A DNA stretch of 64,000 nucleotides from Ostrea edulis (lineage: Eukaryota), in NCBI RefSeq assembly GCF_947568905.1, contig NC_079169.1, positions 90,148,001-90,212,000 on the forward strand. The letters run 5' to 3'. The notes beneath the pieces are model-generated. The model saw nothing but the letters and a program-made list of their open reading frames with translations. It ran no database searches and had not been told where the DNA came from. Numbering within the stretch: the first letter of the stretch is position 1; each line of letters begins with the position of its first letter. This document shows positions 3,501 to 36,291 of this stretch, in pieces. Both the position numbers and the translations under genes were made by a program.

Positions 3501-3769
3501 TCATAGAAATGGGATTTTTGCGTCATATTGACTTGTTGATGTGCATTTCTATTATACTCACAAAATTTCAATACAGTGCGCTCCGAGCAAGGCAAAATTT
3601 CAAATGTTAAATACAGCCCTGATAAAAACATTAACCTCCATTCAAATACCAGTAGTTTTGCATTGACACAGATTTGTCCGTTCACCACTCATGAAGTGTC
3701 CCTATTTTGTTTAGTTTAAATGCCGTGGCCTTTGTAGATAGAAAATCTAAAACAATTTATGTCTTCGAT

Positions 3770-6700: not shown

Positions 6701-8150
6701 ATAACACAAAGAGACAACCAAAACAATTCATATCCAATAACAGAAAGAGACAACCAAAACAATTCATATCTAATAACAGAAAGAGACAACCAAAACAATT
6801 CATATCTAATAACACAAAGAGACAACCAAAACAATTCATATCTAATAACAGAAAGAGACAACCAAAACAATTCATATCCAATAACAGAAAGACACAAAGA
6901 GACAACCAAAACAATTCATATCCAATAACAGAAAAACACAAAGAGACAACTAAAACAATTCATATCTAATAACAGAAAAACACAACCAAAACAATTCATA
7001 TCTAATAACAGAAAGACACAAAGAGACAAACCAAAACAATTCATATCCAATAACAGAAAGACAGAAAGAGACAACCAAAACAATTCATATCCAATAACAG
7101 AAAGACACAAATGGACAACCAAACAATTCATATCCAATAACAGAAAGACACAAAGAGACAACCAAAACAATTCATATCCAATAACACAAAGAGACAACCA
7201 AAACAATTCATATCCAATAACACAAAGAGACAACCAAAACAATTCATATCCAATAACAGAAAGAGACAACCAAAACAATTCATATCTAATAACAGAAAGA
7301 GACAACCAAAACAATTCATATCTAATAACACAAAGAGACAACCAAAACAATTCATATCTAATAACAGAAAGAGACAACCAAAACAATTCATATCCAATAA
7401 CAGAAAGACACAAAGAGACAACCAAAACAATTCATATCCAATAACAGAAAGACACAAAGAGACAACCAAAACAATTCATATCCAATAACAGAAAAACACA
7501 AAGAGACAACCAAAACAATTCATATCCAATAACAGAAAGACACAAATGGACAACCAAACAATTCATATCCAATAACAGAAAGAGACAACCAAAACAATTC
7601 ATATCCAATAACAGAAAGAGACAACCAAAACAATTCATATCCAATAACAGAAAGACACAAAGAGACAACCAAAACAATTCATATCCAATAACAGAAAGAG
7701 ACAACCAAAACAATTCATATCCAATAACAGAAAGACACAAATGGACAACCAAAACAATTCATATCCAATAACAGAAAGACACAAAGAGACAACCAAAACA
7801 ATTCATATCCAATAACACAAAGAGACAACCAAAACAATTCATATCCAATAACAGAAAGAGACAACCAAAACAATTCATATCTAATAACAGAAAGAGACAA
7901 CCAAAACAATTCATATCCAATAACAGAAAGACACAAATGGACAACCAAAACAATTCATATCCAATAACAGAAAGACACAAAGAGACAACTAAAACAATTC
8001 ATATCCAATAACAGAAAAACACAAAGAGACAAGAAAACAATTCATATCCAATAACAGAAAGAGAAAACCAAAACAATTCATATCCAATAACAGAAAGACA
8101 CAAATGGACAACCAAACAATTCATATCCAATAATAGAAAGAGACAGACCA
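3770..8150. repeat. Large A/C-rich variant minisatellite (36-45-bp units, ~110 copies) with higher-order repeats
   Basis: Constant core AAACAATTCATATCCAATAACA followed by about 7 related linkers (GAAAGAGACAACC, GAAAGACACAAAGAGACAACC, GAAAAACACAACC, GAAAGACACAAATGGACAACC and others). Diagnostic variants recur at offsets of 1462, 516 and 284 bp. The array explains all minus-strand ORFs from 3747 to 7980. Confidence 0.97.
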
Positions 8151-8382
8151 AAGCAATCTATGCCCCCGACAGGAGGATATAAACATCTAGACCAAAATAA
8201 TGTATGTTCCCCAACAAAGCCATGAAGAGACAGACAGACCTATACATATTTTATGTCTCCCGACGGCAAAACTCCAAGGGACGATCATGCCAAAATAATT
8301 CACGTTTACCAATTGACGCAGAATTTATGTCACTTGTCTTAGAGTTGATGATTTCTCTACATTAGCGATTGATTTGTAAAAT

Positions 8383-8640
8383 GGGAGGATTCGGTTTAGA
8401 ATATGTCCTCAGTACACCTTCAGAGGCGACTAAATGGGGCAGTCCTTCGGATGAGAGCGCACAAACCGAGGTCCCATGTCATCGCAGGTGTGGCACGATA
8501 AAGATCCCTCCCTACTCCAACGCCTTACGCGCCAAGCATAGGCCAAAATTTTGCAGTCTTTTACCGGCAATGGTGACGTCTCCATACGAGTGGAAAACAT
8601 TCTGGATAGGGACGTTAAACAGAACAAAACCAAACCAACT
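8383..8640 (+). mobile_element. 5'-truncated oyster-type SINE
   Basis: Homologous to the copy at 17666-17931 (GTCCTTCGGATGAGA...CAGGTGTGGCACGATAAAGATCCCTCCCT...GGACGTTAAAC), with a short AAACC-type tail. Confidence 0.8.
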
Positions 8641-8730
8641 CATCGAATGAAACGTAAAACAATACACAAACAAACTTCTACAATAATGAAAAATACGCAA
8701 AGACACGGACAGACAGACCAACGCAATGTA

Positions 8731-8915
8731 TATATTCCCTGATAGAAAGACACCAAGGGACAAATAGACCGACACAATTTGTATATTCCCTGATAGAAAG
8801 ACACCAAGGGACAAATAGACCGACACAATTTGTATATTCCCTGATAGAAAGACACCAAGGGACAAATAGACCGACACAATTTGTATATTCCCTGATAGAA
8901 AGACATCAAGAGACA
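8731..8915. repeat. 51-bp tandem repeat (3 full copies plus 1 partial), a diverged relative of the large minisatellite unit
   Basis: TATATTCCCTGATAGAAAGACACCAAGGGACAAATAGACCGACACAATTTG at 8731, 8782 and 8833, partial at 8884. It shares ACAATT..ATAT.CC..A.AGAAAGACAC.AAG.GACAA with the 3770-8150 unit. Confidence 0.9.
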
Positions 8916-9326
8916 GACGGACCGACATAAGTTACGGTCCCCGTCAGAACGAGACGGACATTCCAAAGAAAAGTATGTGACGGAACGACACTGGTGTAAA
9001 GACACAGACGAACCAAAATAATGTGTGTCTCCCTGCAGAAAGACCTTAGAGACAGATAAACGAAAACTATTAATGTTCTCTTACTAAAAGACACAATTTT
9101 GTTTCCAGACTGAAACACAGCAATGGGCAGACCAAAACAAGATACACTTTAATTTTTTCCCTATATAAAACTAATACAATCTAAAACGTTTCAACTGTTA
9201 AATCAACTCTCACACTCGTGGTCTATTGACCGGTCAATGGTTTTCGAATTGTTGACCGGGCAATAGTCTGCTCTATTTCTATTGGCTACACAAGTCACGT
9301 AATTATCAATCTGCTGCTTTTACGTA

Positions 9327-11655
9327 ATGGCGAGGTTTATTAATTTTAGTGATGATGAGATACAGACTTTATTAGATCAAACGGAAAGCAGGAATACGAA
9401 AAATATTATCAACGTTGCGAAAAATATTTTCGAACAATATATCAACGAAATGCTTCAACAGAATTACGATGATATACAAGATATACCTGCCGAAGAACAA
9501 TCTAATTAAAATTAGATCCTTTGATCCGCTCATCTACTATCGCTACACAATGTCCTTGTGTAGCGATAGTAGATGAGCGGATCAAAGGATCTAATTTTAA
9601 TTAGATTGGCCGAAGAATTTACTCTTGTTCGATGAAATTTTATTGTAACGTCAGGAATCGCAATGGAGAACCTTATGCTAAGAAAACAATATTTTTTCTC
9701 AGGTACGGTTTAAAGAAAACATTTGAAAAAAACCGCACAAATTTGACATTGTAAATGACGACAGATTCAAGGAGGCCAACAAACTTTTTCATGCTTTTTT
9801 GAAAAAGCTGAAAATGGAAGGGGGTGGTGAAAGCAAACATGAGGAAATTAATTCCGAGGAAGATATAAAAAAAATTGTATTCAACCCATACTTTATCGAC
9901 TAAAGACCTTAAATCTCTAGGTGTTTTTTGAACTAATGATGTTTTTGTGTAACCGCGAAAGAGAAAACCGCCGCACTATGACCAAAGAAGATTTGGTAGT
10001 AAACACTGATGCTAATGGGAGGAGATATGTTGTAAAAGTGAAACCAAGGCTCACTAAAAATCACCAGGGTGGAACAGATTACGTGGATGATGGTGGCGGT
10101 AGGATGTACGAAAGAACAGGTAAGAAACTAGTAAAAATGGATATGAATCAGTGTTATACTTAGGGCCATTTCAACACGTTTCACAGGGGATTGATGTCAG
10201 CCTGTCTATTCCATAAAATAGAAATTAACAACACTTTTTCCAGATATATATTGTGGCATGTATATTTCACTTGTTGCACACTTGAAACCAATATCAATTT
10301 AAGGTGGGCCGATCCTCAGGTGACTTATCAATATTAATGGTTAAAAGTGGAAAAACTGTATTAATTTCCACTCAATATAGTTTAATCTAACCAATAACCA
10401 AATAAAATGTGTATGTTGCCACCCTTTTAAAGATGCCAGACATACAAAAACAGAAGCATATATCAACATTAAAAAAATCGCACATTTTCGTTAAATAGAA
10501 TGATGAAAATTTTAAAAAAAACTTGTTGAAATGACAAATTTTAAATTTTAAATTAAGAAATCTGATAATTCATAGATATATAAAAATTAATTGTTGATAT
10601 TAGTGAAATCATTGTCATAGACATGCAGTAGAGGAAATTCCAGCATAGGAGTTATTGCCCTTGACAACATTTTTTAAAATTATAAATAATTGATTATCTA
10701 TGGAAAATAAAAACTTTTTCCGTATCAAAAGTTTACCAGATTTTTTATTTTATTCAGTGAATAAAATTCCTGTGAAAGATATATTTCATGCGAAAAATTT
10801 GATTAAATAAAGATTTTGCAAAAACCTATGACATCACATGAGGATCAATCAACCTTAATTTTGTTTTGTGTGAGCTAGATATTTATATCATTCAGAAAGT
10901 TTTCTGTCTTGTCTTAATCTTATTTATATGAACTTAATAATTGTACAGAGGTAGGTTTTAAAAAAAAAAACCACTTATTTTAGTTCAATTTTATTCTAGG
11001 AACCCCATACTGCCCTGTTCTAAGCTTCGAGAAATACCTGACGAAATTAAATCCAGGTTGTCATTTCTTATGGCAACGGCCCAAGAGTTTTCAAGCTGAA
11101 AGTGAGGATCCATCGATTTGGTATGACAACATGGTTCTGGGCAAGAACTCCCTCGGCCAAATGATGCAGAATATAAGTAAACAAGCAGATCTTTCTAAAG
11201 TGTACAGTAATCACTGCATTAGGGCTACCTGCATAACTCTTCTGGATGAAAGTGGGTATGAAGGGAGGCATATTATGACTGTCTCAAAACATAAATCGAA
11301 AACAACTTTAAAACATTACGTCTCAAAAGCACGGGAGAGAAAGAAACGCGAAATGTCTAACGCATTGGCAGAACAAGTAATCCCACAGACAGCACCAGCT
11401 CCAGAAGTGATCACTGCTACAAGCTCTGATAATGCGAATTTAGAAAATGTTGACTTTCTAGAAATAGATAGTCAGGAATTAAACAATATGATGGTTTCTG
11501 TGCTTGAACAGAATTCAACCGTTGCACAGTCTAACATTCCTGAGCTTAGCACCGTCAATAACCAAATCACGTGCGTTTCGAAAGAAAATGTTTGTCCAAA
11601 ATACAGTTTTAATAACTGTTCAGTCGTTATTAATGACTATGGTGGAAAAAACTAA
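9327..11655 (+). pseudogene. Crypton-type tyrosine recombinase (DUF3504-like) gene of a decayed DNA transposon; two exons (9327-10119, 11000-11655)
   Basis: Conceptual peptide pieces: MARF..SDDEIQTLL..SRNTK; KFYCNVRNRNGEPYAKKT; FDIVNDDRFKEAN; VFFELMMFLCNRERENRR; LTKNHQG; RMYERTG|TPYCPVLSFEKYLTKLNP; WQRPK; WYDNMVLGKNSLG; NHCIRAT; VSKHKS; LKHY. The R / HxxR / H / Y catalytic set is present. A GT-AG intron (10120-10999) restores the frame. At least 3 frameshifts and a MITE insertion disrupt exon 1. Confidence 0.88.
9498..9608. mobile_element. 111-bp perfectly palindromic MITE with 9-bp TSD (AcademH-like)
   Basis: 53-bp perfect arms (9498-9550 / 9556-9608) with loop TGTCC. Direct repeat GCCGAAGAA at 9489-9497 and 9609-9617. 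Termini CAATC...GATTG. Confidence 0.9.
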
Positions 11656-17931: not shown

Positions 17932-18933
17932 CATCCTTCTTTTACTTACAATTTACATAATCACCAGTAATTGATGTACAGTGTGATAATTTTATTCATA
18001 CTCGATGATTATTTAACCATAAATTAGGATTCGACGTATCGATATTCACACCTTTCGCTAAAACTTCCGAACATTGAATGGAAACCTTTGATGCTACAGT
18101 ATAATAAAGTCAATGACTTTGGTAGAGTATTGACTGTCACTACTTCATTCATCATTGGAAATTCACTGAAAAGAAATGGTACAATCATTTATTAGGCAGG
18201 GTAATCATAGATTATATTAATCTTGAAAGTATCTTTGGCTAAATCAGGCACTTACCACGAGGGGTATGGGTACAATATGTTTTTTAGAATTGCTCTCCGT
18301 TTTTTTGTCCATCTTCGGTAGTCATGTGTCGGTCAAAAAACTTTTGAATTTCTGGAACGGTTGAATCAATTTCAACCAACTTTGTTATATGTAATATCTA
18401 TTGTTCAAGGGGGAAACATTGAGAATTTCTTGGACTCTGTATCCCTATGTCTCGAGGATTGTGACCAAAACTATAAAAATTGATGTAATCATCATCTGTC
18501 TGCCTGCCCGTCATTTTTCTCTTCGTCTGTCTGTAATTTTAGCATTGTTCATTTTAAGTCAATGTGCCAGTAACTATGAAAACTATAAGGAGTCTTTTGG
18601 ATTAAAATCGCCTACTTATAGAATTTTATTTGAATTTACTTCAAAGCTCAATTGATATGTTTTCCAGTTGCATCTTTAGATTGTTTTCTTCATTGTTGAA
18701 TGTCTTTGGTAAGTGATTTTGGAACAGATATTATGAAACACCCCGAACTTCTCCTTTTCTTACGAAAGCAGACCAAATTATAGTCAAATGATTTCGTTCA
18801 ACAAATTTTTATCTAATCCGATTTAAAAAAAAAAAAAAAAAATCCTTTGTAGACTTGCATGGTGTTAAAGCTGAGGGTGGTGGTAAGCCTAAACTTTATT
18901 CACTTTTAAAGAATGGCATAGTTTTGTGATTGA

Positions 18934-19400
18934 TTTTAGCTCACCTGTGCTGAAGGCTTGAGTGAGCTTTACTGGTCAACTTTTGTCAGATGTCTTTTTG
19001 TCCGTAAATCTGTCTGTCTGACGTAAAATTAAAAAAATAATTGATCTCAATATGAGGCACTGGGCTATATCGACTAAAGTTGACACAAAACATCCTTTGT
19101 TAGAGGGAATGTATTTCTTCCTAAGGGTAAGTAGTACGGAAACAGTCAAATTAATATGGAGACATTTAGAAATCTTCTCGGGAATCATTAATCCAGAAAA
19201 GACTAAATTACTTGGAAGCATGTTCATGTAGTATAAATGCAATTTTGTTCAAATGGTGGTTTTGGGGTCAATATGGGGCTAGAATGGGATTTAGAATTTT
19301 ATATAGGATTACAATGTATAGGGACTTTCTTTAGAAATCTTTCAAGAGCCATAAAATTACACTGGTTTTATCAAATGAAAACATCGTTGGTTTTTTTTCC
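18934..19400 (+). mobile_element. Degenerate CvA/pearl-like HINE
   Basis: Starts TTTTAGCTCACCTGTGCTGAAGGCTTGAGTGAGCTT, then a (TCTG) tract and eroded core repeats. Same 5' signature as 31657. The right boundary is approximate. Confidence 0.65.
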
Positions 19401-21246: not shown

Positions 21247-22051
21247 GTAAGTAACATGGAAAGGAAAACAATATAATGTACCAATAGCTCTAGAACCACT
21301 GTAGTATATTTGCAAACTTTGTATGCCACTTTGGTCAATTGCAAATAAATCTTAAGCTTGTAGTCTATGAATATGAGCTTTTCAAGAAAGTGAAAGAATT
21401 TACAAATACCCTTTCGTCCCTGAAAGACATGTATCTAACGAGACGCTTTTAAGAATATTGATACAGGAAGACATTTACCCCCATTTTATTTTCCCATGTT
21501 TTCACCCTCATTCTTTGTCTGTTTATCTAAAACTGGGAAAATTAGAATATACTCAGAGCTCTGAAGTGGCTTGGAACGAAAATGTTGTTCAATACGTCTG
21601 GGCGAAAATAGCACTGCACGAAAATGTCCCTCTAAACAGTAGTGAAAGAGGTTCGCTCCTGAGTTTTATAGCATGCCAAATTTGTCGGAAGTATACTTTT
21701 AATTTCAACATTGAAGGGAAATCGTGACATCAAAAAGAAAAATCTGAGGTCATAGTGCTTGTTATTGAGCTATAGTATACATGTATTAAACTTGGCCTTT
21801 TTGTGCTTAAATTTTACTTCTGATTTATTTGCATAATGTCGACTTGTCTGTCGGTATCAACACAACATAAGCAATGCAAATTAATCATTACATCAAATAG
21901 ATACATAATCATAAAAGTACCACAAAAGGTACATCATACGCCTGTCGGACAGTTAAGAAAATGTCAGTGCAATATCTGTAACTGTATCCATAATGAGAAA
22001 AAGTCTAGAAAACTGTTTGATTTACTTTTAGCCTTAAAGTAGGTGAAGGTC

Positions 22052-24241
22052 TAGCAGCAATAATGTAGCCCTATCCGACTTTTTTTATTCTGAGGTTTTC
22101 AGGATAGGGCTACAATTCCATAGGATCTCCGTTATGGTGCAAAATAATTTTATGAATAACCAATAATAAGCTCCGTGTATTAGTCCCAAATGTTGTTTAC
22201 ACCAAAAGGAGTACCGCTTTTGTGCTTGGGTATGTAGAATACAGGTGTTTTTCATTAAACATCATGTACAACATGCAAAATTCTTCGTCTGCTCTGCCAT
22301 GCTTGTTATCGCGAGATCTCATAGGTGGATCTACTGAAAAACTTAAACATTGAAAATCTGCGCGAAAATGTAGTTACTCGAGCCACTCTGACAAAGAAAG
22401 AAAAGCATATGGTTGCAGAAAGAATTTACACTCTGCTGTTCGTTTTTTAACTTGATATTAAATCTAAACCTTTTTAATACCGACGAAAGAGCTTTCACCT
22501 CCGTACTTGTCCATTGGTGTAAATACTACCTAATATGGCATATGCAAATAACTTGACAATCGGAAGTTGAAACTTCAGTACATCAAACATGGCGCACAAA
22601 TATGAATCGAGAAATTGGAATATATCGAAATTGTTGAAAACTGTAGAATAGAGCCTCACAAATCGTAAGTTGCAGGTTTTTAATTTATATAATGACCAAG
22701 AAACATAGAATATCATTTTATTTACGTAACACATAGAACTTTCCTTGAACTAATCATGCTCCTACCGGATGTACTTAATATGCGTGTTTTAGGGCATGCG
22801 CCATACGTAAATAGGTAAGAAAATATCAACATCCGATGTATTTTTAGAAGCGGAAGCACGTGTATGTAAATTTTCAATAAACGATGTCTTGGCGATTTGT
22901 ACCTTCCCTGAGCTGAGTCTAGTAAGGCTACGTACATGGCGAAAAGTAAGAGTTGGAAATTAAAAATTTTACTTATCCACCTCAAGAAGAAAATTCATAT
23001 ATGAAATTAAAAATAGAAGAATTATCAGACGGTGAAGTAATCTAGTTACATGCTGAGTGGGGGCGCTATAGGTGCCAAACGAATGAAAGAATCATCTTGA
23101 CTTACAACAAATTTTGATTTCCTTGTTACGGAATCTGATGTCTCAATATAGGCCATGCCATTGGCAAAATAATCTCTTCAGGATTAGCATTACCCCCTCT
23201 TCAGTCAAGAGCTTGTAGTCTTTGTACAAAATATTGCATGCAGAGGGCTGGATAAAAACACATTTAGCTTAGCACATCAGATGATTTTTAAATTTTGATA
23301 TAAATGAAAGCAAGTGGACAATAAACATTGTTGACTGTGGTGTAGGGGCAATAAGTAAAACAGTTCAGACAGGCACTGCCCCATCTGCCAGAACAAGTCA
23401 TTATTGAATCTTGACGAAGATAACTGATGATTTTCTTTTATTGTATGGGGGTTTGTATAGAAATGGGAACTAAAATCAAGTGTATTCCCTAAATTTGAAA
23501 ACTTTAGAGATAAGAATGCATATTTGAATCAAATTCTCTTCGAAATATCATTTCAAAAGCCGAGAAAAATTTAAAAATCTAACGAAAAATTACGTTTAAT
23601 AATGAAAACAATCAACCGGAAGTAGTATTTTTCTCAAAATTTGCTGTAAGGAAATATGATTTACCCAGAAAATGAGGAAAAAACTCTGAATTGGACTTAC
23701 TGCAACTTAATCGTCAGAGGAAATTCAAGCTACTTACAAAAATCGAAGATTCAAATCAAAATATCCTCATAACAATTATTAGTTTAATCACCGAGTTGGG
23801 AGTATATCAATCTCTTTAATCACAACCAGTCGAAAATATTTAAAAAATCATTAAAAATTCATTTCTTGATCAATTTCTATAAAAAAAATTCCCAACGAAG
23901 CGCTTATTTATATTCTCTCAATTTCAGATCAGTGCGCATGTGCAAAGGGAAAATCCCGTCTGAAAATAGAAATGCGCATACCTGATAGGGTCGTATCAAT
24001 ATACGGCCCGCTTCAATGTTGCGACGTCATAGGTCACCTAATTTGCATTAATTATTCATAGTTACAAGGAGCAAGGAAAGTTCTATGTGCGTAAAGAAAG
24101 TCAGCACATGTTTAGAATGATCGAAAATGTTGCGGGAATGAACCACTCCCGCATTTGCACCATTACGGAGATCCCAAGGAGTTGTAGTCCCCCCCCCCCC
24201 TCTCAAAGAAAAAATCGGAGAAGGCTACATTATTGCAGCTA
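22052..24241. mobile_element. 2,190-bp non-autonomous TAGCTGCA-family TIR element (AcademH-like)
   Basis: ~90-bp imperfect TIRs (TAGCAGCAATAATGTAGCCCT.../...GGCTACATTATTGCAGCTA). TSD GTGAAGGTC (22043-22051) / GTCAAGGTC (24242-24250), 8 of 9 identical. Confidence 0.8.
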
Positions 24242-24308
24242 GTCAAGGTCCATCAATTAACTAGCTGCAGAACTGTAGCTCTCTGAAAAAATATTTTGAC
24301 ATAACAGA

Positions 24309-25164
24309 GAGCTACAGAGCCACCCCTTATAAAAACCTTCGATTTACGGTGCACAAAAATCTGCGCACGGTTGAGGCCTTATATCGTTGTATTCTGGAGT
24401 TGCTGTCTCATAAATTTAATATCAAAAAATTCTTAACATATTTTCCTACTATACTTGTGTCTAAACATACCTTCAAATATTCATTAAAGCCCCATACGAC
24501 CTGAAAACTCCCAGCTTCAAATGATTTCGTTTGTTGACGTAGCCATGTTAGGTAGCCGGTCAATTCGAATCCTGGTTAATTTCCATACTTGCACAATAAC
24601 GTCTAGATGTGAACTAATATCCCCACAAATATTTTAGCTAAATATTTTAAATAATATATCACCCCAGTGCCTTTAAATAATAATTATTCAAATAGCTAAA
24701 CTCACGGCAATGTGGCTTTCATTAGTCTGGTCCGGTCTCCATCGCTGCCACACGAGTGTTAAGGACTTTAGTAGCATTTTCATGAATCAAGAGCTTATTT
24801 TACCTTTAGAAAAACTTTATTTTTTTAATTTCTATAAATTATTCGTATTGATAATAAATGAAGAGCGAATACATAACATATAACGAATTTTATGAAAACA
24901 GGGTACGAATTGACCGGCTACCTAACATGGCTACGTCAACAAACGAAATCATTTGAAGCTGGGAGTTTTCAGGTCGTATGGGGCTTTAATGAATATTTGA
25001 AGGTATGTTTAGACACAAGTATAGTAGGAAAATATGTTAAGAATTTTTTGATATTAAATTTATGAGACAGCAACTCAAGAATACAACGATATAAGGCCTC
25101 AACCGTGCGCAGCTTTTTGTGCGCTGTAAATCGAAGGTTTTTATAAGGGGTGGCTCTGTAGCTC
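24309..25164. repeat. 856-bp foldback (259-bp inverted arms, about 4 mismatches, 338-bp spacer) inside the left TIR of the 10.9-kb element
   Basis: Arms 24309-24567 and 24906-25164 read as reverse complements (GAGCTACAGAGCCACCCCTTAT...CAATTCG / CGAATTG...ATAAGGGGTGGCTCTGTAGCTC). Confidence 0.92.
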
Positions 25165-27575
25165 CCCTACTAACGTGTTCGGAACATATTCTTTATCGGT
25201 GTTAAGTAGAGCGTAAAATCAAAGACTATCGAATGAAATATAATCTCGCTGCTCCGAGACTCCAACGCGAGCTACCTGAGACCCGGTGAATTTTCTACCG
25301 GATATGGATGTGCTTTAAGGAATTCCAGTGTTAATGTAAGTATCAATTAGAAATTATGGTATATTGTGCTTTATTTGTTTTTGCAATATATAGATCTACG
25401 TATCAATGCATTATTTTCCTAATGCCATCAGCTAATAAAGCTTAAATAAGAAATGGCAAGAAAGAGTTATCGTCCTTAGATTTGGACCTAGGCCAACTTT
25501 GAAAGAAGTCTTGATTATCGTGAAAAAAATATTGAGAGGACATCTTTCTATTTCAAATGCCATAATTAAATTTTAATGTTGCATAGGGATTGTGTTCAAT
25601 TTATCAAACACTGAAATGTTGCATACAATTTACCATTTCCACGCAGAAAATATTATAGTCTGTTTCATGTTTGAGGTATATACATGTATGTATCTGTGAA
25701 TGTACATGTTACAAGCAAAGAAAGATGCATTGCAAGTTTCTTAAAACTTCTAAACTTAATATTTCTTTGATGGAAACATAATCATTTTCCTAATCTAGCA
25801 GTATAGATAAAGTGAATTTATTTTATGAAGAAAGTAAAGTTTATTGATTGGATCTATTGTGGTGACCAGGGGGTGTGTATACTACCCATTCATAATTTTT
25901 TGATATGTAAAGATTTTGATAATTAAACTCATTGATGCATGCAGAACACCTAAGAAAATTAGAATGAATGAAAAGTATATGACATGTATTTGTATGATTA
26001 TCATTTGGTACATATGTAAATGAAAAATTCCAACTTTTCCTTATATGATATGATTTAATAATAATAATACCATATTTATATAGCACCCTTTTCATCCACT
26101 ATATGTATGTACGCTCAAAGGTGACCAATTATGGATTGTTTTTAAGTGGAGGGAAAGCAACAATAAATGGAAATTAGAACATGACTAGATGTATACATGT
26201 ATATATATAGTAACCATTGCCAAAGTATATAATGTACCAGTGATAATTTTAAAAGTTGATCACAAAACTGCAAAGGACATCAGGGGACAGTGCATTATAT
26301 TTAACAGGATCCTCCCTGTATCTAATGCAGGGTTGTAATTGTCATTTATAACATGTATATTAAATCTGGTAAAAAATGTGCATATTAGACACCAGTGGAC
26401 AATGCATTAATTAAATTTTTTATCAGATCATGCATCAATCTTCTTATATGTAGCAAAATATCGCAGTCTTTGATTTATATAAAATCATAGTAGAAAACAT
26501 TTAAAATTCCTGAGTGGTGCAGGTCTCATACTCATTTACAGATTGGCAGTTTATAGCTCTGAGTTTCTGTAACCACACACATGTATTACTAATGTTTATT
26601 TATGCAAGCATTTATGATATATATTAATCATTAACACATATATTAATGTGACGGGACAATATACATGGATATACATCATAACTTTTTCCTTTATTGATAC
26701 ATTATAAGCAGTACATATTTTCATAAGTCATTTCTAAAAAAAAAAAAAACAATCCTTTTATGAATGAAATACCTACATGCATTTCTGATCTTTTTAATTA
26801 ATTTAGATTTACTTATTCCAATTACAAACTTATAATTACAGAAACACACATGTAATAATATCAATAATCTTTTTCATATTTAGATTAGTCATGTATCTGT
26901 ATGTTAGAGGACAATCTGTACAAAATTTTTAAATCTTAAATCAAATAATTGAATCACAATTAGGATTATATTGCACTACACTGTAATTAACTATTGTTTT
27001 AATATACATCAACTATATTTTGTCTGTAAGAAACCTTTGCTGTATCATTTTTAGTATTACATTTCGCAACATAATTAAACAGTTATAAGTCTCAGAAATC
27101 AAAATTGAGCTGTGATCATCCAGAAGCTGTTCTAGAAATTTAGGAGAAGAAATTATTTTGCATGATCATATTACATGGATTTTTTTTTTCAAGTTTGGCC
27201 AAGTTAGGATCATAGTGTGCACTGAGTATTATTTAACCTAAAGTAAAGAATTTTGTAATTATAAGCTCCCTTTAATAAAAAGCTGACTGTGCAATGTTAA
27301 TTATTTTACATGTTTTAGTTTGTGCTATATATTTAACTGAATTGCCTTAAATTGTAAAAGAAATTGTGAATTAAATACAATTGTAACTGATCAAAATATT
27401 TATTATATTGCATGTTGATGGAGTTTTGAAAATTTAAAAGCATAAATTAAGGCATCAAATAAATATGGTGTTTCTGACCAAAATTTAAACACACTACCCT
27501 TAGTTTTTAAAATAAACATATATTGTTGAAGAGATCATTGAAGAAACATTGTTTGACATCTGTAATTCAATTTTA

Positions 27576-28766
27576 CATACATGCCAACTTTTGAAAATCC
27601 CCATGGGGGATTTTTCGCGCGACGACCTTTTTTCAACGCTCAAAATTCACGACATTTTACCACGAAAATAAATATTTGTCTTTTCAAATAAAATATCAAT
27701 CTAATCATTATACATGTATCATACATCAAGTGTGTTTGACCATCAACTTTAACAAAACTATATTAAAAAAAACTTTGAAAGATATAGATAAGTATTTTAT
27801 TAAAATCATCTATTCAGCAAAAAATCCTCTCCAACAAGTCACATACATATCAAATAATACTTAAAGTTGCATCCTTTTACACCATATACACATTGGCTGG
27901 TCTATATATCAACATTTAAATTAAAGCACATGCATTTAGGTACGACTACAAAGGCGATCTTGCTTGTCTGTAAACAATTTCATGGGCTTGCAGAGTCTGG
28001 TGGAACAATCTGCATTGCAACCAGAAAAGGAGTGATCTGCCCTGCTATGAAGTTTGCGAACAAAACCTTTGCACCCATGACATCTGAAATAATTACCAAG
28101 AAAACACACATCAAAATATACGTTTTTACTTGTAAAATACTTGTAAAATATAAAAATAAAAATTCAGTACAGACTTGTGCAAATTACGCATCACAAAGTC
28201 TATTGAATACTACGCTATATAGACTATGTAATACATCGCTATAGACAGATAGATTCGGGTAGCCTATATTATCATAGTTGGAAAAACATATATTTTACGT
28301 ACCTTTAATATTGCATATTTTGGATGCTGTCAGCGAGAGGCAAAAATCGGGAATGTCCGATTGTTTCGTGGTGACACTATTATCATTGCCATTCACGTTT
28401 GTGTAAAGGATATGTCAATTTGAAATCCGTCTTCCCGATTAATTACTATCAAAACATGCTTCGCACTGTCCAATAAGCACCCCGACACGGGCAGACCAAG
28501 GAAATTACATCACTCCGATACCATGCGACACAGGTAAACAGCAATGGCTGACTATTGTCCCGATTTCTGATTGGCCAGTTCAGAAATGACGCGGGGTTTC
28601 AAATTCCGGTTGGAAATGGGGGTTTGTTGTCGTAAAATGGGAGACATTTTTAGAAAATCGGGATTTCGGGGTATTTTTGCAATCCCGATCGGGATATCGG
28701 GATTTGCCTTTTCAACTGCTTGAAATCGGGAAAATCCCGCACAAATCGGGAAAGTTGGCATGTATG
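27576..28766 (-). mobile_element. Internally deleted hAT-like DNA transposon with 6-bp TSD
   Basis: TIR CATACATGCCAACTTT / AAAGTTGGCATGTATG; TSD ATTTTA (27570-27575, 28767-28772). Minus-strand remnants FPW..C..C..H, KQSDIPDF and DVMGAKVLFANFIAG..PFLVA..PDS resemble hAT transposase N-terminal motifs. Subterminal AATCGGGA repeats. Confidence 0.72.
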
Positions 28767-29014
28767 ATTTTATCTATAATAAGGAATTTTAATCAAACTA
28801 AATCTAAAAGTTTCATTGACAAGTGAAAATAAGTTCAATAAGACACAATTAATTTGTTTAAATGGAGATTGTGATCAGAATATTAAAACTTAATTGTTTA
28901 CAGTTAAAGAAAAAAGTTACGAATTATATGTTCCAATCTGAATTGAAATTAGACTGGTATATTCGACTCGTCTTCGGTACACCTCAATACAAGGAAGTGT
29001 ATCATAGAGAAGTG

Positions 29015-29497
29015 TATGGAATCCGGATAGGGCCACGTAGTTCACTATCGCACCATCGCGCCATCGAGGTTTGGGTCGATGGTGCGATGGCGCGATAATG
29101 CGATGACGATGGCGCGATGGTGCGATGACGATGACGCGATGGTGCGATAGCGCGATGACGATGGTAAGATGGCACGATAATGCGATAACGATGGTGCGAT
29201 GGAGCGATACTGCGATGGTACGATGGCGATGATGCGATAACGCGATATCATTATGCCATCGGTATCGCGTTATCGCATCATCGCCATCGTACCATCGCGT
29301 CATCGTAGTATCGCTCCATCGCACTATCGCATCATCGTTATCGCATTATCGTGCCATCTTACCATCGTCATCGCACCATCGCGTCATCGCACCATCGCGC
29401 CATCGTCATCGCATTATCGCGCCATCGCACCATCGACCCAAACCTCGATGATGCGATGGTGCGATAGTGAACTACGTGGCCCTATCCGTATTCCATA
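29015..29497. mobile_element. 483-bp CpG-rich foldback MITE, IS3EU-like (copy 1)
   Basis: TIR TATGGAATCCGGATAGGGCCACGTAGTTCACTATCGCACCATCG. Interior is a CGATG block followed by a CATCG block. 6-bp TSD GAAGTG (29009-29014, 29498-29503). Confidence 0.88.
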
Positions 29498-29897
29498 GAA
29501 GTGGGATTCTTTTTCTCTTGCCATTATTTTGACTTGCACAGCAATTTATATTTTTAGCCTAAATTTCAAATCATAATACATATTTGTGCATGTGTCTGCT
29601 TTCAGTGTACTTTTTGGGGACTTTGAGTGATCGATTCACCACCCTTTGAACAAATGTATTTTGAGATCCTCAAAGGAATCCTAGATTTGTCAAGGTATCA
29701 CATCTTCCTATAATTGAATGTAATGATTATGTTTTCAAGATTTTAAAGGAGATTATTCTGTCTACAAAGTGAGATCATTTTATCTGTCCTTAAATTTTTA
29801 ACCAAGCTATACACTGCATGCAGATAATTTTGTTTCATAAAAAATTGTTATAGTATTTAAACATCTTTTTATGCATGGTTGTATATGTACATGTAAC

Positions 29898-30367
29898 TAT
29901 GGAATCCGGAAAGGGCCACATAGTTCACTATCGCACCATCGCATCATCGAGGTTTGGGTCGATGGTGCGATGGCGCGATAATGCGATGACGATGGCGCGA
30001 TGACGATGACGCGATGGCGCGATGACGATGGTAAGATACCGCGATAATGCGATAACGATGGTGCGATAGTGCAATGGAGCGATAGTGCGATGACGCGATG
30101 GTACGATGGCGATGATGCGATACCGTCATCGCGCCATCGGTATCGCGTTATCGCATCATCGTCATCGTACCATCGCGTCATCGTAGTATCGCTCCATCGC
30201 ACTATCGCACCATCGTTATCGCATTATCGCGTCATCGTACCATCATCATCGCGTCATCGCACCATCGCGCCATCGTCATCGCATTATCGCGTCATCGCAC
30301 CATCGATCCAAACCTCGATGGCGCGATGGTGCGGTAGTGAACTACGTGGCCCTATCCAGATTCCATA
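29898..30367. mobile_element. 470-bp CpG-rich foldback MITE, IS3EU-like (copy 2)
   Basis: Same TIR family as copy 1. 6-bp TSD TGTAAC (29892-29897, 30368-30373). Confidence 0.88.
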
Positions 30368-30896
30368 TGTAACAGAACTTATGAAGTACATGTATATGTG
30401 TTCAGTGTTTTATTATGTAAAATCTACTTAGGGGTACAACTACATTTACAAATTAATTATGTACATGCACACAAAGGCACAAACACAATTTCTACCTCAA
30501 AACTTTCATCAGATACAAGTCAAAAAATTTAAGATTATAAGAATTAAGCTAATAATTATACATGTAGCAGATCTTAGAAATATTTTCATGAAGAGATACA
30601 TTATTGCTTATGCTATCACTTTGCCTGTATTTCTGTCTTGGTTGAGTATATAGTACACTTGCAGATGACACACACTGTTTCATGGAATACTGCATCTTAA
30701 TTACTGACAAATCGTATAATTTCATAATATTACATTTTTTGTTACATACTAAATAAGTGCATGATTTTTTTCCTTTTAGAAGCCATGTTTTAATTGCTGC
30801 CCATCAAATAGTACTGTGTCTTGCATGTGTAAATTGTAAGTATTCAGTGTCTTAGTATAAATCGTTAGTATTTTGAAGCATGATGTCACAGTTAGT

Positions 30897-31462
30897 TTAT
30901 TATGTCTCCCCTCTTCCAGGGGGATCGAGACATTGTTTTTGTATTTTCTGTATGTCCATCTGTCTGTCACAAATTCTTGTGAACGCTTCTCCTCCTACCG
31001 TATATGGCTTATCCGCTAGACTTGAAACTTTGTACAATGCTTCAATGCCATATGGAGATGTGCATATTGTTGGGACGGGAGGATCCAATTATTTTCCTAA
31101 AAGTTACAGTGGATCTAAGAGGAGTGGAAGATGTTTAAATAGCTTGTGAATGCTTCTCCTCTGATATGGATTATCAGAGTTAGACTTAAACTTTTCACAA
31201 TACTTCAATGCCATTTGCAGATTGACATATATTGTAGGGATAGGAAGATCCAATTGTTTTCTTAAAATCTTAGGGGTGGAGGGTATAAAATAATTTGTGA
31301 ACACTTCTATATGGCTTATCGGAGTTCATAAATGCTTATATGCTTCTGTTCATGCTTTCTCCTCAATACCATACAGTACAATAAGGGGCAGTTTCATTTG
31401 GAGAACTTCCAATTTGGGGAGCTCAGGGAGACATTTGTATTTCCTAATAAACAATCTTTAGT
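30897..31462 (+). mobile_element. Degenerate HINE with ~170-bp core repeats
   Basis: 5' TTATGTCTCCCC...GAGACATTGTTTT followed by a (TCTG) tract; cores starting TTGTGAAYGCTTCTCCTC; 3' subterminal GGGAGACAT. Confidence 0.65.
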
Positions 31463-31656
31463 TTCAAATTGTGATTATGGTATTTTTGTTTCTCTTCTAT
31501 GAAATGTTAATTATATTAAATATCTATTTTGAAAAAAAAATCATAAGATATATATGTAAAGTTATAATTAAAATTTTTCTTTCTGGTAAAATAGGCATAG
31601 TGTATATGCAGTGTAGGTAGAGATAAATCACATAGCAAAGAAAAATTCCAAATTGA

Positions 31657-32715
31657 TTTTAGCTCACATGAGCTGAAAGCTTGAAAGAGCAATTCTGATA
31701 ACTTTTTGCTGTCATCAGTCCATCTGTACAACCTTTTCAACTTCTCCAGAACCATAGTGTTAATTTCAGCCTAACTTGCCACCCTTCACAGGGGAGATAA
31801 TCACAAAATAGGGTGGGTTCATTAAAAGTCTTCTCAAGAACCACAGGGCCAGAAGAGCTGAAATTTACAAGCAAGCTTCCTGGCATAGTGTAGATTCAGG
31901 TTTATTAAAATAATGACCCCCTAGGGATAGGATGGGGCCACAATAGGGGATCAAGGTTTTACATGCAAAGGTATAAGGAGAATCTTTTAAAAATCTTCTT
32001 CTCAAGAACCACTGGGCCAGGAAAGCACAAATTTGCAAGAAAGCTTCCTGACATAGTGCAGATTCAAGTTTGATAACATCATGGCCCCCGGGGGTAGGAT
32101 GGGGCAACAATTGGGGATCAAAGTTTTACATACAAATATATAGGGAAAATATAACATCTTCTCAAGAACCAATGGACCAGAAAGTAAGACAAAAGTTTAT
32201 ATTTACATGAAAGCTCCCTGACATAGTGCAGATTCAAATTTGTTAAAATCATAGCTCCCAGGGGTAGGATGGGGCCACAATAGGGGATAAAAATTTCACA
32301 TACAAATATATAAGGAAAATCTATTGTTTTTTAATTTTAAAGAATCACTGGGCCAGAAAGTCTTACATTTATGTCAAAGCTTGCTGACATAGTGCAGATT
32401 TAAGTTTGTTAAAATTACTCCCCCCCCCCCCCCCCCCCCCCCCAGGGGAAGGGTGTGGCCACAATAGGGGATCAAAGTTTAACATACAAATATATAGGGA
32501 AAATCTTTTTCTCAAGAAGCCATTGGGACAACGAAATTTACATTTACATGAAAGCTTCCTGACATAGTGCAGATTCAATTTTGTAATAATCATAGTTATG
32601 GGGGTAAGTTGGGTCCACAATAAGGATCAAAGCTTTACATGCAAATATACAAGAACAATCTTTAAATATGGGCCAAGGTAACTCATGCGAGCAATGTGGT
32701 CCATGGGCCTCTTGT
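31657..32715 (+). mobile_element. CvA/pearl-like HINE with ~5 copies of a ~165-bp satellite-related core
   Basis: 5' TTTTAGCTCACATGAGCTGAAAGC. Cores CTCAAGAACCACTGGGCCAG...AAGCTTCCTGACATAGTGCAGATTCAAG at about 31833, 32001, 32161, 32341 and 32511. 3' GCGAGCAATGTGGTCCATGGGCCTCTTG. Confidence 0.88.
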
Positions 32716-33639
32716 CTTTAATGCTATTGATACTAAATTGAAACAGAATAGATATCTAGAAGGAGTAATTAAGACAATCAATCAGTATTCATATTTCATA
32801 CTGGAAAATAAAATTTAGATAGCTTATATTGATCATTGTGAATTTTTTTTTCTTTCAGAGATTCATTTTGAGGAAATAGCTGGTGTGCAGTGCACATTCC
32901 TAAATGAATTCATCAGTTTACATTAAGGATCTACCTTCAAATCCTGTAATCTGGGATGCTCTAAAGTGCATGTCACAGACTAAAGTTATAAAAATAACTT
33001 CCAAGAATTTTTAAGAAATTGTTATAACTTTGAAATGTATGTATATACATGTATACTGATATTGAATTAAATTTTATAAAATTTCAACATCTGATTTTAT
33101 GTATATATAGACATATTGTAAAAAAAATTCCACTCTAAAGGTTTAATTTCTTTAATATTTAAGACTTAAAAAAAACTTTTGCAGATACAGTGGTGTAACA
33201 TTGTCTTACTTTCTGATCAATACATATAGATAAGAAAACTATGTATATTTCAATAAATGTGGAAAATTTTCAACCATTGAATTTCCATTTATGAGTAGTA
33301 ACTTGTACATAGTACTTCCTAACCAACTTTGATACTGTATAACTATAACTACCTGCTTGCATGCATTGCAGAGCACGTACAGCCGTGGTAATAATTCACA
33401 TTTGCTGATGAATTGCTTTAGCATAAAGAGTAAAATTAGTACGTTAAGTTTTAAATTTATGAAAATGCATATTAGGCTTTTCACAGATATTTCTTAAAAT
33501 ATATAGAAAATATGTATATATTCATATAATTGTATAAATCCTGCTAATCTAGCTTCTTCCTAAGTGAGGTGTATGGCACGCCATATTTATACAATGTATC
33601 TACCGGGTATTCCTTTAAGGATTTCATATATAATTTATG

Positions 33640-34240
33640 AAATATCTTCTATTTCTGATATCTAATAAATCTTATAAGATATATATCTCATATAATATAT
33701 AGTTTATAAAATATTTAAGATATATATTATAAATTATGAAAGATATCTCCTAAGCCTTATAAGATATCTTGTATATCAAATGATATAATGTTTAACAGAT
33801 ATCTTATAAAACATAAAATATCTTAAATGTTTTATAAGATTTCTCACAAGCTTTATAAGTTATCTTACATATCTTATAAGATATCTCATAAACAATTTAA
33901 AAAAAAATATAGCTCAAACTTTGATATATCTTATAATATACATGCAAGATATCTTGTATGTTTTATGATATATATCTTATAAAAGTAAATTCATATGATA
34001 CATTATAAAGTTAACAAGATGTCTTATAAAATTTCGTTTTTGAGATATCTTATTAAGTTTGAGATATCTTAAAAGACATAAGATATATGTTTTAGAAGAT
34101 AACTTATAAAATATATAACATATTTTATCATCTTTTATCAGATATCCAATTATAAAGGATACAATTAATATATTTCATAAACTTTAGAAGATATCTTGAA
34201 AGTTCAATAACATATCTTATAAAATTTATGAGATATCTTT
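33640..34240. repeat. Degenerate AT-rich array built from palindromic ATCTTATAAGAT / AGATATCT modules
   Basis: Perfect palindromes at 33669-33680 and 33869-33884, with many partial copies throughout. Confidence 0.7.
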
Positions 34241-36291
34241 AAAGAGGAATAAATCTAAAAATAGAATGCTATAGAAGTGTAGTAATAGAATCTAACAATA
34301 ACATCAATTTCATTTTTTCTGTGACGATGATTAACTTATAATGTGATATATTATTTTGTGCAGTTTATATGAGTCGCAAATATACTATAAGGCAGGAATC
34401 GCACATTTTCTTCACCAATTCTATTTTCAATGCAAAATATTCTCTTTTTGTAACCAATGCTGAAGATAACTTAATTTGTTAAAAATCCTTGACAAGAGAA
34501 AAAAAATTGATTTGTCCTGTGACTTGCCCACTCTACAAAATCCTAAATCGGGGAGGGGGAACTTTTCTCCTAAGTTCGAAAAAATTCATGATTTCTTAAT
34601 TCGGAGGGGGAGGGGGTGTTAAAAACTTACTACCAAAGATAATTTTTTTTATACAAATTCTCCATGAATACATGCATATATGTTTGCAGTTCTGTATTAC
34701 CCTAAATACCACTATAAATGAAAAATGAAAGAAAGCAGTCTCCCCAATTTCTTTATTTGCATATGTTATAAACAATGGAATTATTACCGTTGCCCCCCCC
34801 CCCCCCCCCCCGAACAAAAGAAGAAAAGACCCTCCCCCCTCATGACACGACAATAAGACTAAATATCAGATAAACTACAATCTAAATCTTTAAATGACTT
34901 TAACTTCCTGAGCTTTTCACTATTTCACAATCATCGCTGGTATGACAGTACTTAATTGAATTTTCTAATTTGCATTGATGATACATGTCTATTACAGTAT
35001 ATAGAAAATGACTATAGCTTTGGCATATTTATTTCCGGTTTCCTTCACTGCGGAATTTGACCTCACCTCTAACCTTTTAATGGGTCAAAAAACCCACGTG
35101 GTGTAAATTTAAATAACAATAACGTTAGTAGGGGTATGTTATGTCAAAATATTTTTTCAGAGAGCTACAGTTCTGCAGCTATCAATTAACCTGAAATGCA
35201 AATTGGATCACTCTTCCTCTGAGACGAAGGTTGTGACTACATTTCGGTGTAATACCTGTATCCATAACGAAAAAAATCTGTAAAACTTCGACCTACTTTT
35301 AGCCCTAAAGTAAGTCACGGTCCACCAATCCAGCTGAAATGCAAAGTCACTCTTACGCTTCTTTACAGCGTCATTACATAATACGTCCAGTGAGTGCATG
35401 GTTTGTCCTATTAACTTCTCTTACCATTGGTATTGAAGATGTTCATGTGGGAAAGATTTTGATATTCAATTTTTAAAGAAAGAAAATTACACGTTGTTGA
35501 ACTTAGTCAGTTTTGAGGAAATATTATAAAGTGATGCAAGAGTAAAATGGTTTGTCCTTGTAACTCCTCTCACAGTTTTGAAGTTAAGGCCTTTGTAAAC
35601 AACTTTAAGATGTGCGTATTGTAAGGATTTTGCTTCTCAACATATGAACGTCTTGTTGAGGGAGGTTTAAGGAGGTATGAGAACCCAAGAAATTCATAAT
35701 AAAAGGAATGTGTTCCATTCATATGATATTGAGCTGATCTACATGTATGTAATAGAGTTTGCATTAACTCTTGCAAAATTACATTTTTATGTTACATTGA
35801 AAATTTAAAAAAAAAATCCTAATTCTGCAAGAATTTTGAAAACGGAATTTTAAAAAGTGGATAACAATAATGGATAACAAATTTGAATTATTGGTCAAAA
35901 TACAAAATTTTCATACACAATGTCTGGAAAAATGATATAGAGGTTTTTTAGAATCGGTATTCTGTTTGGAAAAAAATAACCAAATTGATGAATTCACAAC
36001 ATTTGAATCTCTACTACTTGCACCATAAATTACAAAATTGAAGTACACGTCCAGGATTGCAAATATTGACAATAGATTGGATAAAACAGAAACTATAAAA
36101 TCGTGCAGATTTAGGACATTTTGATGAAACAATCCTTCCGCCATAGAATGTAGTCCTTTCCAAATCCTTTCAAAATTTGTATCGACATGAAATTTTTCAA
36201 CTGGATAATTTAAAGTGATAAATGTACATGTATAATATAAGTTCTTGATATTAAATTTATTTTTCTTTGATTAACTTTCCCTCTATTTCAG

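What the first reader, a model, noticed from the sequence alone, without database searches (positions are those of the whole stretch)
24262..35181. 10.9-kb composite element: a TE nest or cargo carrier bounded by 58-bp TIRs
Seen: matching TIRs 10.9 kb apart with a perfect 9-bp TSD. Inside are a foldback, a hAT derivative, two IS3EU-like MITEs, two HINEs and a palindromic AT array (~4.6 kb plus), and ~6 kb of AT-rich sequence in which I found no transposase or helicase ORF. The TIRs and TSD are pristine while some passengers (the HINEs at 30897 and 31657) are clearly decayed. Inference: the unit may have moved recently with old cargo already aboard, i.e. a large non-autonomous element shuttling other TEs or captured genomic DNA.
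Basis: partly seen in the sequence, partly recalled or inferred. Interest (0 to 1): 0.72.

Follow-up and report, generated by a model that had tools for sequence, protein, structure and literature searches.

The report
Nested transposons, not one cargo carrier
The "10.9-kb element" is an ordinary 966-bp foldback transposon, split near one end by a separate 7.8-kb non-coding transposon; that inner element, not the outer unit, has spread through this oyster-like genome carrying old repeat fragments.

Summary
The inverted termini at 24262 and 35181 and the perfect 9-bp duplication TCAATTAAC are there.

- **Outer element.** The terminal 45 bp belong to a family with more than 1000 end matches. Its normal unit is a 964-966-bp foldback with 9-bp duplications. 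Window 24262-25164 plus 35137-35181 is one such unit.
- **Inner element.** The foldback is split by a 9,972-bp insert (25165-35136). The insert has its own ends, CACCCCTACTAACGT...GTG, and 5-bp (sometimes 4-bp) duplications.
- **Inner family.** It has a 7.8-kb non-coding body, at least 40 copies and 133 exact end matches, in unrelated flanks. Pairwise divergence is about 2.3%.
- **Cargo.** Both HINE-like arrays and the AT palindrome array are part of that body in every copy compared. They diverge as little as the rest, so old cargo moved with the inner unit.
- **Private insertions.** Three elements (27576-28766, 29015-29497, 29898-30367) occur only in this copy.
- **Composite.** Its junction is unique in the genome, so nothing suggests the 10.9-kb unit ever moved.
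- **Open.** The inner family's superfamily is unsettled: Transib/RAG-like by end bases and duplication length, but no transposase partner was found.

This scan had noted the same stretch (s1-271499).

The parts
24253..24261 (.). Left copy of the 9-bp target-site duplication TCAATTAAC of the outer foldback element
24262..25164 (+). Outer foldback element, part A. It equals positions 1-919 of the 966-bp family unit. The 45-bp terminal repeat is 24262-24306 and the long arms are 24309-24577 and 24896-25164.
   Evidence: It lies 1.2-3.3% from seven other family copies once the insert is removed.
25165..35136 (+). Inner element copy, 9,972 bp: a 7,810-bp family body plus three private insertions with their duplications. 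The left end is CCCTACTAACGT and lacks CAC. The right end, 35122-35136, is ACGTTAGTAGGGGTA.
27576..28766 (+). Private 1,191-bp element with inverted ends CATACATGCCAACTTT and a 6-bp duplication ATTTTA (27570-27575 and 28767-28772). It belongs to its own family of at least 33 full-length copies.
   Evidence: Absent from 9 of 9 other inner copies. The empty site is shown and the family.
29015..29497 (.). Private CATCG/CGATG foldback MITE no. 1, with a 6-bp duplication GAAGTG
29898..30367 (.). Private CATCG/CGATG foldback MITE no. 2, with a 6-bp duplication TGTAAC
30897..31450 (+). HINE-like fragment no. 1, with two ~167-bp monomers at 30976-31267. It is part of the inner family body.
31657..32720 (+). 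HINE-like element no. 2: a head with the AGCTCA..TGAGCT inverted pair, then about five 168-bp monomers at 31829-32666. It is part of the inner family body.
   Evidence: Present full-length in 38 other family copies at 89-97% identity. The period is and the HINE architecture is described in PMC7492417.
33560..34260 (.). AT-rich palindromic array, part of the inner family body
   Evidence: Matches itself on the opposite strand at 64-73% in every copy.
35137..35181 (-). Outer foldback element, part B: the last 45 bp (family positions 922-966), identical to the consensus. 35137-35141 (TGTTA) is the pentamer hit by the inner element.
35182..35190 (.). Right copy of the 9-bp duplication TCAATTAAC
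22052..24241 (.). Neighbouring 2.2-kb element with related ends (TAGCAGCAATAATGTAGCC...) and a 9-bp duplication GTGAAGGTC / GTCAAGGTC. It ends 2 bp before the duplication of the outer foldback.
   Evidence: It has no open frame above 87 aa.
35240..35360 (+). Paralogous uninterrupted copy of the target region (an empty site for both insertions)

Best explanation
This is a three-layer nest built by successive insertions, not a single mobile unit.

1. A 966-bp non-autonomous foldback element inserted and made the 9-bp duplication TCAATTAAC. It has long inverted arms and belongs to a family with more than 1000 end matches.
2. A 7.8-kb non-coding element then inserted into pentamer TGTTA of the foldback's right arm, 45 bp from its tip. 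Its ends are CACCCCTACTAACGT...ACGTTAGTAGGGGTG and it makes 5-bp (sometimes 4-bp) duplications. This pushed the last 45 bp of the foldback 10 kb away.
3. Three small elements then landed in that copy.
4. About 10 bp at the inner element's left junction are missing (its CAC plus one duplication copy), and its last base is G to A. This inner copy is therefore probably dead.

Steps 1-3 are shown. In step 4 the missing bases are observed, and only their cause and the inactivity are inferred.

The inner family amplified as a whole, presumably by cut-and-paste with a transposase supplied in trans. Two decayed HINE arrays and an AT palindrome array were already part of its body. The identity of that transposase is inferred, not shown. 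Terminal CAC and 5-bp duplications point to a Transib/RAG-like enzyme.
For: **Outer family**
- The 45-bp end gives 533 forward and 512 reverse matches against 0 for the control.
- The nine distinct paired units found in the fetched loci are 94-966 bp; six of them are 964-966 bp. Seven have 9-bp duplications and the two short ones have 8 bp.
- The window matches the unit at positions 1-919 and 922-966.

**Inner family**
- At least 19 copies match at 94-98% and share query segments 1-2411, 3603-3850, 4333-4733 and 5203-9971.
- 16 left flanks are all different.
- Of 21 copies with both flanks, 14 have exact 5-bp duplications and 6 have 4-bp ones.
- There are 133 exact matches to the 15-base end against 2 for the control.
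- 38 other copies carry HINE no. 2 full-length.
- Pairwise distance is uniform at 2.0-2.8% across the HINE regions and the rest of the body.
- Two oversized copies (16.6 and 18.3 kb) are the same body plus nested inserts.

**Nesting and uniqueness**
- The three private inserts are absent from 9 of 9 other copies and have clean 6-bp duplications.
- The composite junction occurs once in the genome.
- The empty-site paralog aligns through the insertion point.

**No coding capacity**
- The longest frame is 142 aa; shuffled sequence averages 102 and reaches 163.
- Pfam finds nothing at or above its cut-offs; the best E-value is 0.07.
- tblastn finds no RAG1L or RAG2L remnant.
Against: - The inner copy's left junction is not clean: it has no CAC and no second TGTTA. 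The 5-bp duplication for this copy is therefore inferred from one side and from the family rule.
- Both 45-bp outer ends are intact, so mobilisation of the whole nest cannot be excluded in principle.
- Copy counts are lower bounds, because the genome search scores only the best candidates.
- No autonomous partner was found for either family.
Confidence: 0.9

Rival explanations
1. One reading: the 10.9-kb unit bounded by the 45/58-bp repeats is one large non-autonomous transposon that moved recently with other elements as cargo.
For: - The outer ends are perfect and the 9-bp duplication is perfect.
- The outer family is young and abundant, with mean pairwise distance 2.5%, so a transposase was recently available.
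Against: - The normal family unit is 966 bp and the interior is one discrete insertion into it.
- The junction GACATAACATACCCCTACTAACGT is unique in the genome.
- The interior moves on its own, with its own ends and duplications.
- The perfect duplication is explained by the original 966-bp insertion.
Confidence: 0.04
2. The inner 7.8-kb family is a non-autonomous partner of a Transib or RAG-like (RAGL) transposase. That enzyme cuts at the terminal CAC and makes 5-bp staggered target cuts.
For: - The ends are CAC...GTG, and 5-bp duplications are found in 14 of 21 copies.
- Both traits are described as hallmarks of RAG, Transib and RAGL elements in PMC7204232.
- The genome holds RAGL transposons with open RAG1L (995 aa) and RAG2L (457 aa) genes. 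Two copies are 98.3% identical, with 5-bp duplications.
Against: - Beyond CAC, the inner end CACCCCTACTAACGT matches neither this genome's RAGL end CACTATCAAACTTCC nor the protostome consensus CACTWMCAAACKTYKBB.
- Six of 21 duplications are 4 bp.
- The duplications are AT-rich.
- None of the 42 RAG1-domain matches lies inside or next to a listed family copy.
- Nothing within 4 mismatches of the end occurs in three RAG1-like loci examined.
Confidence: 0.35
3. The inner family belongs to another CAC-ended superfamily, such as the Chapaev/CACTA group (2-4-bp duplications) or an undescribed one. Its 5-bp duplications would be a family peculiarity.
For: - The ends are CAC.
- A sizeable minority of duplications are 4 bp, 6 of 21.
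- No link to a RAG1-like gene was found.
Against: - Five bp is the clear mode, 14 of 21. If the enzyme made 4-bp duplications, a fifth matching base would arise by chance in only about a quarter of copies.
- No transposase of that kind was sought or found.
- Which duplication length goes with which superfamily rests on my general knowledge, not on a test here.
Confidence: 0.25
4. The two 45-bp ends belong to two unrelated foldback copies, and the DNA between them is ordinary genomic sequence.
For: Many solo 45-bp ends exist in the genome. One pair 15 kb apart on C1 has no matching duplication.
Against: - The flanking 9-mers are identical.
- The two pieces add up exactly to one family unit (1-919 plus 922-966).
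- The paralogous empty site is colinear across the insertion point.
Confidence: 0.01

Closest known systems
Nested transposon insertions ('TE nests') in repeat-rich animal genomes
   Same: Elements are stacked by successive insertion, each with its own ends and duplication. The order can be read from the topology.
   Different: Nothing essential differs. The only unusual point is that the insertion lies 45 bp from the host element's tip, which imitates a long-TIR giant element.
Foldback or long-TIR MITEs of the Mutator (MULE) type
   Same: The outer family has a 9-bp duplication, roughly 300-bp inverted arms, no coding capacity and hundreds of copies.
   Different: No MULE transposase partner was sought, and the terminal sequence TAGCTGCAG... 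was not compared with any library. The assignment rests on duplication length and architecture only.
Non-autonomous Transib / RAG-like (RAGL) elements (PMC7204232)
   Same: The ends are CAC...GTG and 5-bp duplications predominate. The host genome contains apparently intact RAGL transposons. That paper reports a few non-autonomous RAGL elements in a pearl oyster.
   Different: The end sequence shows no similarity beyond CAC and there is no RSS-like nonamer. 29% of duplications are 4 bp. The body is large (7.8 kb) and unrelated to RAGL, and no partner was found.
HINE / Cg_HINE non-autonomous Helentrons carrying satellite-like repeats (PMC7492417, PMC4067079)
   Same: The two internal blocks have a head with a short inverted pair, a GTCY-like remnant and central monomers of 167-168 bp. 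This is the architecture and monomer size described for oyster HINEs.
   Different: Here they are decayed fragments fixed inside another transposon and now spread passively by it. They were not compared with a HINE library.

Membership tests
   The junction pattern occurs once, in the window itself. The only other exact hit is an independent insertion in a diverged relative. Other family units are 94-966 bp.
   The interior has its own 15-bp ends, its own 4-5-bp duplications and unrelated flanks in more than 20 copies.
Mutator-like foldback MITE (outer element) | 9-bp (8-11 bp) target-site duplication | tested here: met
   The window has 9 bp. Seven of nine other copies have 9 bp and two have 8 bp.
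Mutator-like foldback MITE (outer element) | Long terminal inverted repeats and no coding capacity | tested here: met
   The arms are about 314 bp in the 966-bp unit.
Mutator-like foldback MITE (outer element) | An autonomous partner with the same ends encoding a MULE transposase | not tested
   One 15-kb interval between two ends held only a tyrosine-recombinase-like frame and had no matching duplication.
Transib / RAGL non-autonomous element (inner family) | 5-bp target-site duplication | tested here: met
   14 of 21 copies have an exact 5-bp duplication, one has 5 bp with a mismatch and six have 4 bp. So 5 bp predominates but is not invariable.
Transib / RAGL non-autonomous element (inner family) | Ends begin with CAC | tested here: met
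   CACCCC... is found at both ends in nearly all copies.
Transib / RAGL non-autonomous element (inner family) | The end resembles the RSS heptamer or the RAGL/Transib end consensus beyond CAC | tested here: not met
   CACCCCTACTAACGT was compared with the consensus CACTWMCAAACKTYKBB and with this genome's CACTATCAAACTTCC.
Transib / RAGL non-autonomous element (inner family) | An autonomous partner sharing the ends and encoding RAG1-like transposase | tested here: not met
   None of the 42 PF12940 matches lies in or beside a family copy. Nothing resembling the end was found in three RAG1-like loci. The search was not exhaustive.
HINE (non-autonomous Helentron) for the two internal blocks | A left flank with a subterminal repeat plus its complement and a GTCY microsatellite; central tandem monomers; a right-flank palindrome; no duplication | tested here: inconclusive
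   The head inverted pair and the 167-168-bp monomers were seen. Other features were not examined and no library comparison was made. The architecture is as described in PMC7492417.

The most novel reading that the evidence does not exclude
The 7.8-kb non-coding family is mobilised by a RAG-like or Transib transposase that is still intact in this genome. It prefers a defined site at the loop-stem junction of the terminal hairpin of foldback elements. Two independent copies, in opposite orientations, hit the homologous pentamer (TAACA and TACCA) in two diverged foldback families.
Probability: 0.12. Interest if true: 0.6.

Novelty: new member of a known kind. Interest (0 to 1): 0.33.

Why it matters
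- **For annotation.** An insertion close to the tip of a long-TIR element can pass for a giant cargo transposon. TIR-plus-TSD finders will make the same mistake.
- **For biology.** There are two modest points. A 7.8-kb non-coding DNA transposon has amplified to at least 40 copies, possibly about 65 judging from 133 exact end matches, while carrying Helentron-derived satellite-like arrays. This is a second-hand route for spreading such repeats.
- **A testable substrate.** The family's CAC ends and 5-bp duplications, in a genome with apparently intact RAG-like transposons, make it a candidate substrate for testing what those enzymes can move.

Tried and rejected
1. **Autonomous partner for the inner family.**
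   - A Pfam RAG1 scan of the genome gave 42 matches, none inside or beside a family copy.
   - Three RAG1-like loci held nothing within 4 mismatches of the end.
   - The two largest end-to-end intervals are the same body with unrelated nested inserts. One insert has an OTU-protease frame.
2. **Coding remnants in the inner copy.** Eight frames were run against Pfam and RAG1L/RAG2L were run by tblastn. Nothing was found.
3. **Hairpin targeting.**
   - The terminal 57 nt of the foldback fold strongly, with z = -5.7.
   - Across 22 target sites, enclosing stems are not enriched once the two foldback hits are left out, p = 0.16.
4. **Targeting through a CACCCCT motif near the site.** The foldback carries CACCCCTTATAA 13 nt from the insertion point. 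The motif is not enriched at the other 21 sites.
5. **A large outer-family member on C1.** The ends lie 15 kb apart but have no matching duplication, and the interior holds a tyrosine-recombinase-like frame. It is not a composite.
6. **Rfam.** No RNA family was found in 21500-36000.
8. **A first bulk fetch of whole copies.** Ends and selected copies were fetched instead.
Full report
**Observation**

The termini exist. 24262-24315 and 35128-35181 are 54 nt long and 93% complementary. TCAATTAAC flanks both sides. The core of the repeat occurs only at these two places in the window, with none expected by chance.

**What the outer repeat is**

- The first 45 bases match 533 forward and 512 reverse sites in the 895-Mb assembly. 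The control pattern gave 0.
- Matches pair up at 964-966 bp, with a few shorter derivatives of 931, 346 and 94 bp. Seven of nine have 9-bp duplications and the two shortest have 8 bp.
- A canonical 966-bp unit (L003:1501-2466) aligns to window 24262-25164 over its positions 1-919. Its last 45 bases align to 35137-35181.
The remaining 9-13 bases of the '58-bp TIR' are a chance partial match to the end of another element.
- With the interior removed, the window copy lies 1.2-3.3% from seven other members.
- A paralogous stretch at about 35240-35360 aligns without a gap through this insertion point. It also aligns through that of a related 2.2-kb element (22052-24241, duplication GTGAAGGTC/GTCAAGGTC) that ends 2 bp upstream.

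**What splits it**

- The 9,972 bp at 25165-35136 begin CCCTACTAACGT and end ACGTTAGTAGGGGTA.
- Searched against the genome, this stretch finds at least 19 other copies at 94-98% identity. They share four colinear blocks: query 1-2411, 3603-3850, 4333-4733 and 5203-9971. That is a 7.8-kb body; for example C7:83955746-83963554 is 7,809 bp.
- Sixteen left flanks are all different, and they show that the true end is CACCCCTACTAACGT.
- The exact 15-mer occurs 133 times, against 2 for the control.
- Of 21 copies with both flanks in hand, 14 have exact 5-bp duplications, one has 5 bp with a mismatch and six have 4 bp.
- The interior is therefore an independent cut-and-paste element family.
- Two oversized copies (16.6 and 18.3 kb) are the same body with nested insertions.

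**The window copy in detail**

- The foldback consensus reads ...GTAGCTCTC TGTTA TGTC... at the insertion point.
- The window has ...GGGGTA|TGTTATGTC on the right. That is the family end with its last G changed to A, followed by the pentamer.
- On the left it has ...GTAGCTC|CCCTAC, which lacks about 10 bases: the second TGTTA and the CAC.
- The insertion site is thus inferred from one clean side, and this copy is probably immobile.

**Cargo versus later arrivals**

- Nine of nine other copies that cover the region lack 27576-28766, 29015-29497 and 29898-30367.
- Their sequence shows the empty sites, with 6-bp duplications ATTTTA, GAAGTG and TGTAAC.
- The 1.19-kb insert is itself a family of at least 33 full-length copies.
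- By contrast, both HINE-like blocks and the AT palindrome array are present, colinear, in all copies. HINE no. 2 is full-length in 38 other copies at 89-97%.
- Between-copy distance is uniform along the body: 2.1% and 2.2% in the two HINE blocks, against 2.0-2.8% elsewhere, with mean 2.3% and a star-like pattern.
- The 167-168-bp monomers inside the blocks are only 70-77% alike.
- So decayed HINEs were aboard before a recent burst.
- The block architecture fits oyster HINEs as described in PMC7492417. I made no library comparison.

**Is the 10.9-kb nest mobile?**

- The junction pattern GACATANCANNNCCCTACTAACGT has two exact hits: the window itself and C5:87301597.
- The C5 copy sits in a diverged foldback relative, in the opposite orientation, with its own intact duplication TACCA.
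- So the composite is unique, and there is no sign that it ever moved.

**An unexplained coincidence**

- Two independent insertions hit the homologous pentamer, at the loop-stem junction of the foldback's terminal hairpin.
- With roughly 10^3 such sites in 895 Mb this cannot be chance, so some preference exists.
- Neither a general hairpin preference (p = 0.16 without these two) nor a nearby CACCCCT motif explains the other 20 sites.

**Mechanism and class of the inner family**

- It is non-coding. The longest frame is 142 aa, within the range of shuffled sequence. Pfam gave no hit above threshold and tblastn found no RAG1L or RAG2L remnant. No Rfam family matched. It must therefore be moved in trans.
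- CAC ends and predominantly 5-bp duplications are the signature of RAG, Transib and RAGL elements (PMC7204232).
- The genome does hold RAGL transposons. L057 and L058 are 7.96 kb and 98.3% identical. Their ends are CACTATCAAACTTCC and their duplications are GTTTG and AGGGG.
- These elements carry convergent genes. RAG1L is 995 aa with RING and RAG1 core domains. RAG2L is 457 aa with kelch and PHD domains, and is broken in L058.
- However, the inner family's end shares only CAC with these ends and with the published protostome consensus. No RAG1-like gene lies in or near any family copy seen, and three RAG1-like loci have nothing resembling the end.
- I therefore describe it as Transib/RAG-like in behaviour (about 35%). 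A Chapaev/CACTA-type or unknown superfamily remains open. I do not file it as a member of any.

**Limits**

- Genome searches score only the best candidates, so copy numbers are lower bounds.
- No eukaryotic repeat library was available.
Ten large chromosomes, the 895-Mb size and the HINE content suggest an oyster, but that is my inference.

**Verdict**

This is an ordinary nest, and the inner family is a modestly interesting new large non-autonomous element.

Noticed in passing
L057:1781-9736 (G000:C2:108458380-108466335) and L058:1822-9749 (G000:C7:74522321-74530248): Two copies of a 7.96-kb RAG-like transposon, 98.3% identical. Ends are CACTATCAAACTTCC and the 5-bp duplications are GTTTG and AGGGG. 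RAG1L is open at 995 aa (RING plus RAG1 core). The convergent RAG2L is 457 aa (kelch plus PHD) in L057 and split into 286 and 210 aa in L058. At least five near-full RAG1 matches exist genome-wide.
   Followed up: partly
window 35137-35141 and G000:C5:87301597-87301620 (L052/L036): Two independent inner-family insertions, in opposite orientations, hit the homologous pentamer (TAACA and TACCA). The site is the loop-stem junction of the terminal hairpin of two diverged foldback families. This is far beyond chance and remains unexplained.
   Followed up: partly
window 22052-24241: A 2.2-kb non-coding element whose ends (TAGCAGCAATAATGTAGCC) resemble those of the outer foldback (TAGCTGCAGAACTGTAGC). 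It has a 9-bp duplication and lies only 2 bp from the foldback's target site.
   Followed up: partly
L098+L099 (G000:C5:37051500-37065600): The whole 14.1-kb stretch is its own reverse complement at 99.4%, a giant palindrome or an assembly artefact. It contains mirrored RAG1-like fragments.
   Followed up: no
L094:6661 to L095 (G000:C2:~847693-849978): A 762-aa open frame with an OTU cysteine-protease domain, inside an 8.9-kb element nested in another copy of the inner family.
   Followed up: partly
L101/L102 (G000:C1:76365773-76380709): Two 45-bp foldback ends 15 kb apart without a matching duplication. The interior has a run of 150-280-aa frames, one with a phage-integrase SAM-like domain, which suggests a Crypton/DIRS-like element.
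   Followed up: partly
window 18929-18984: A solitary copy of the HINE head (82% identical to 31652-31706) elsewhere in the window.
   Followed up: no
window 4001-8000: A 4-kb stretch with extreme strand asymmetry (GC skew about -0.48, AT skew about +0.62), probably a long simple or satellite array.
   Followed up: no
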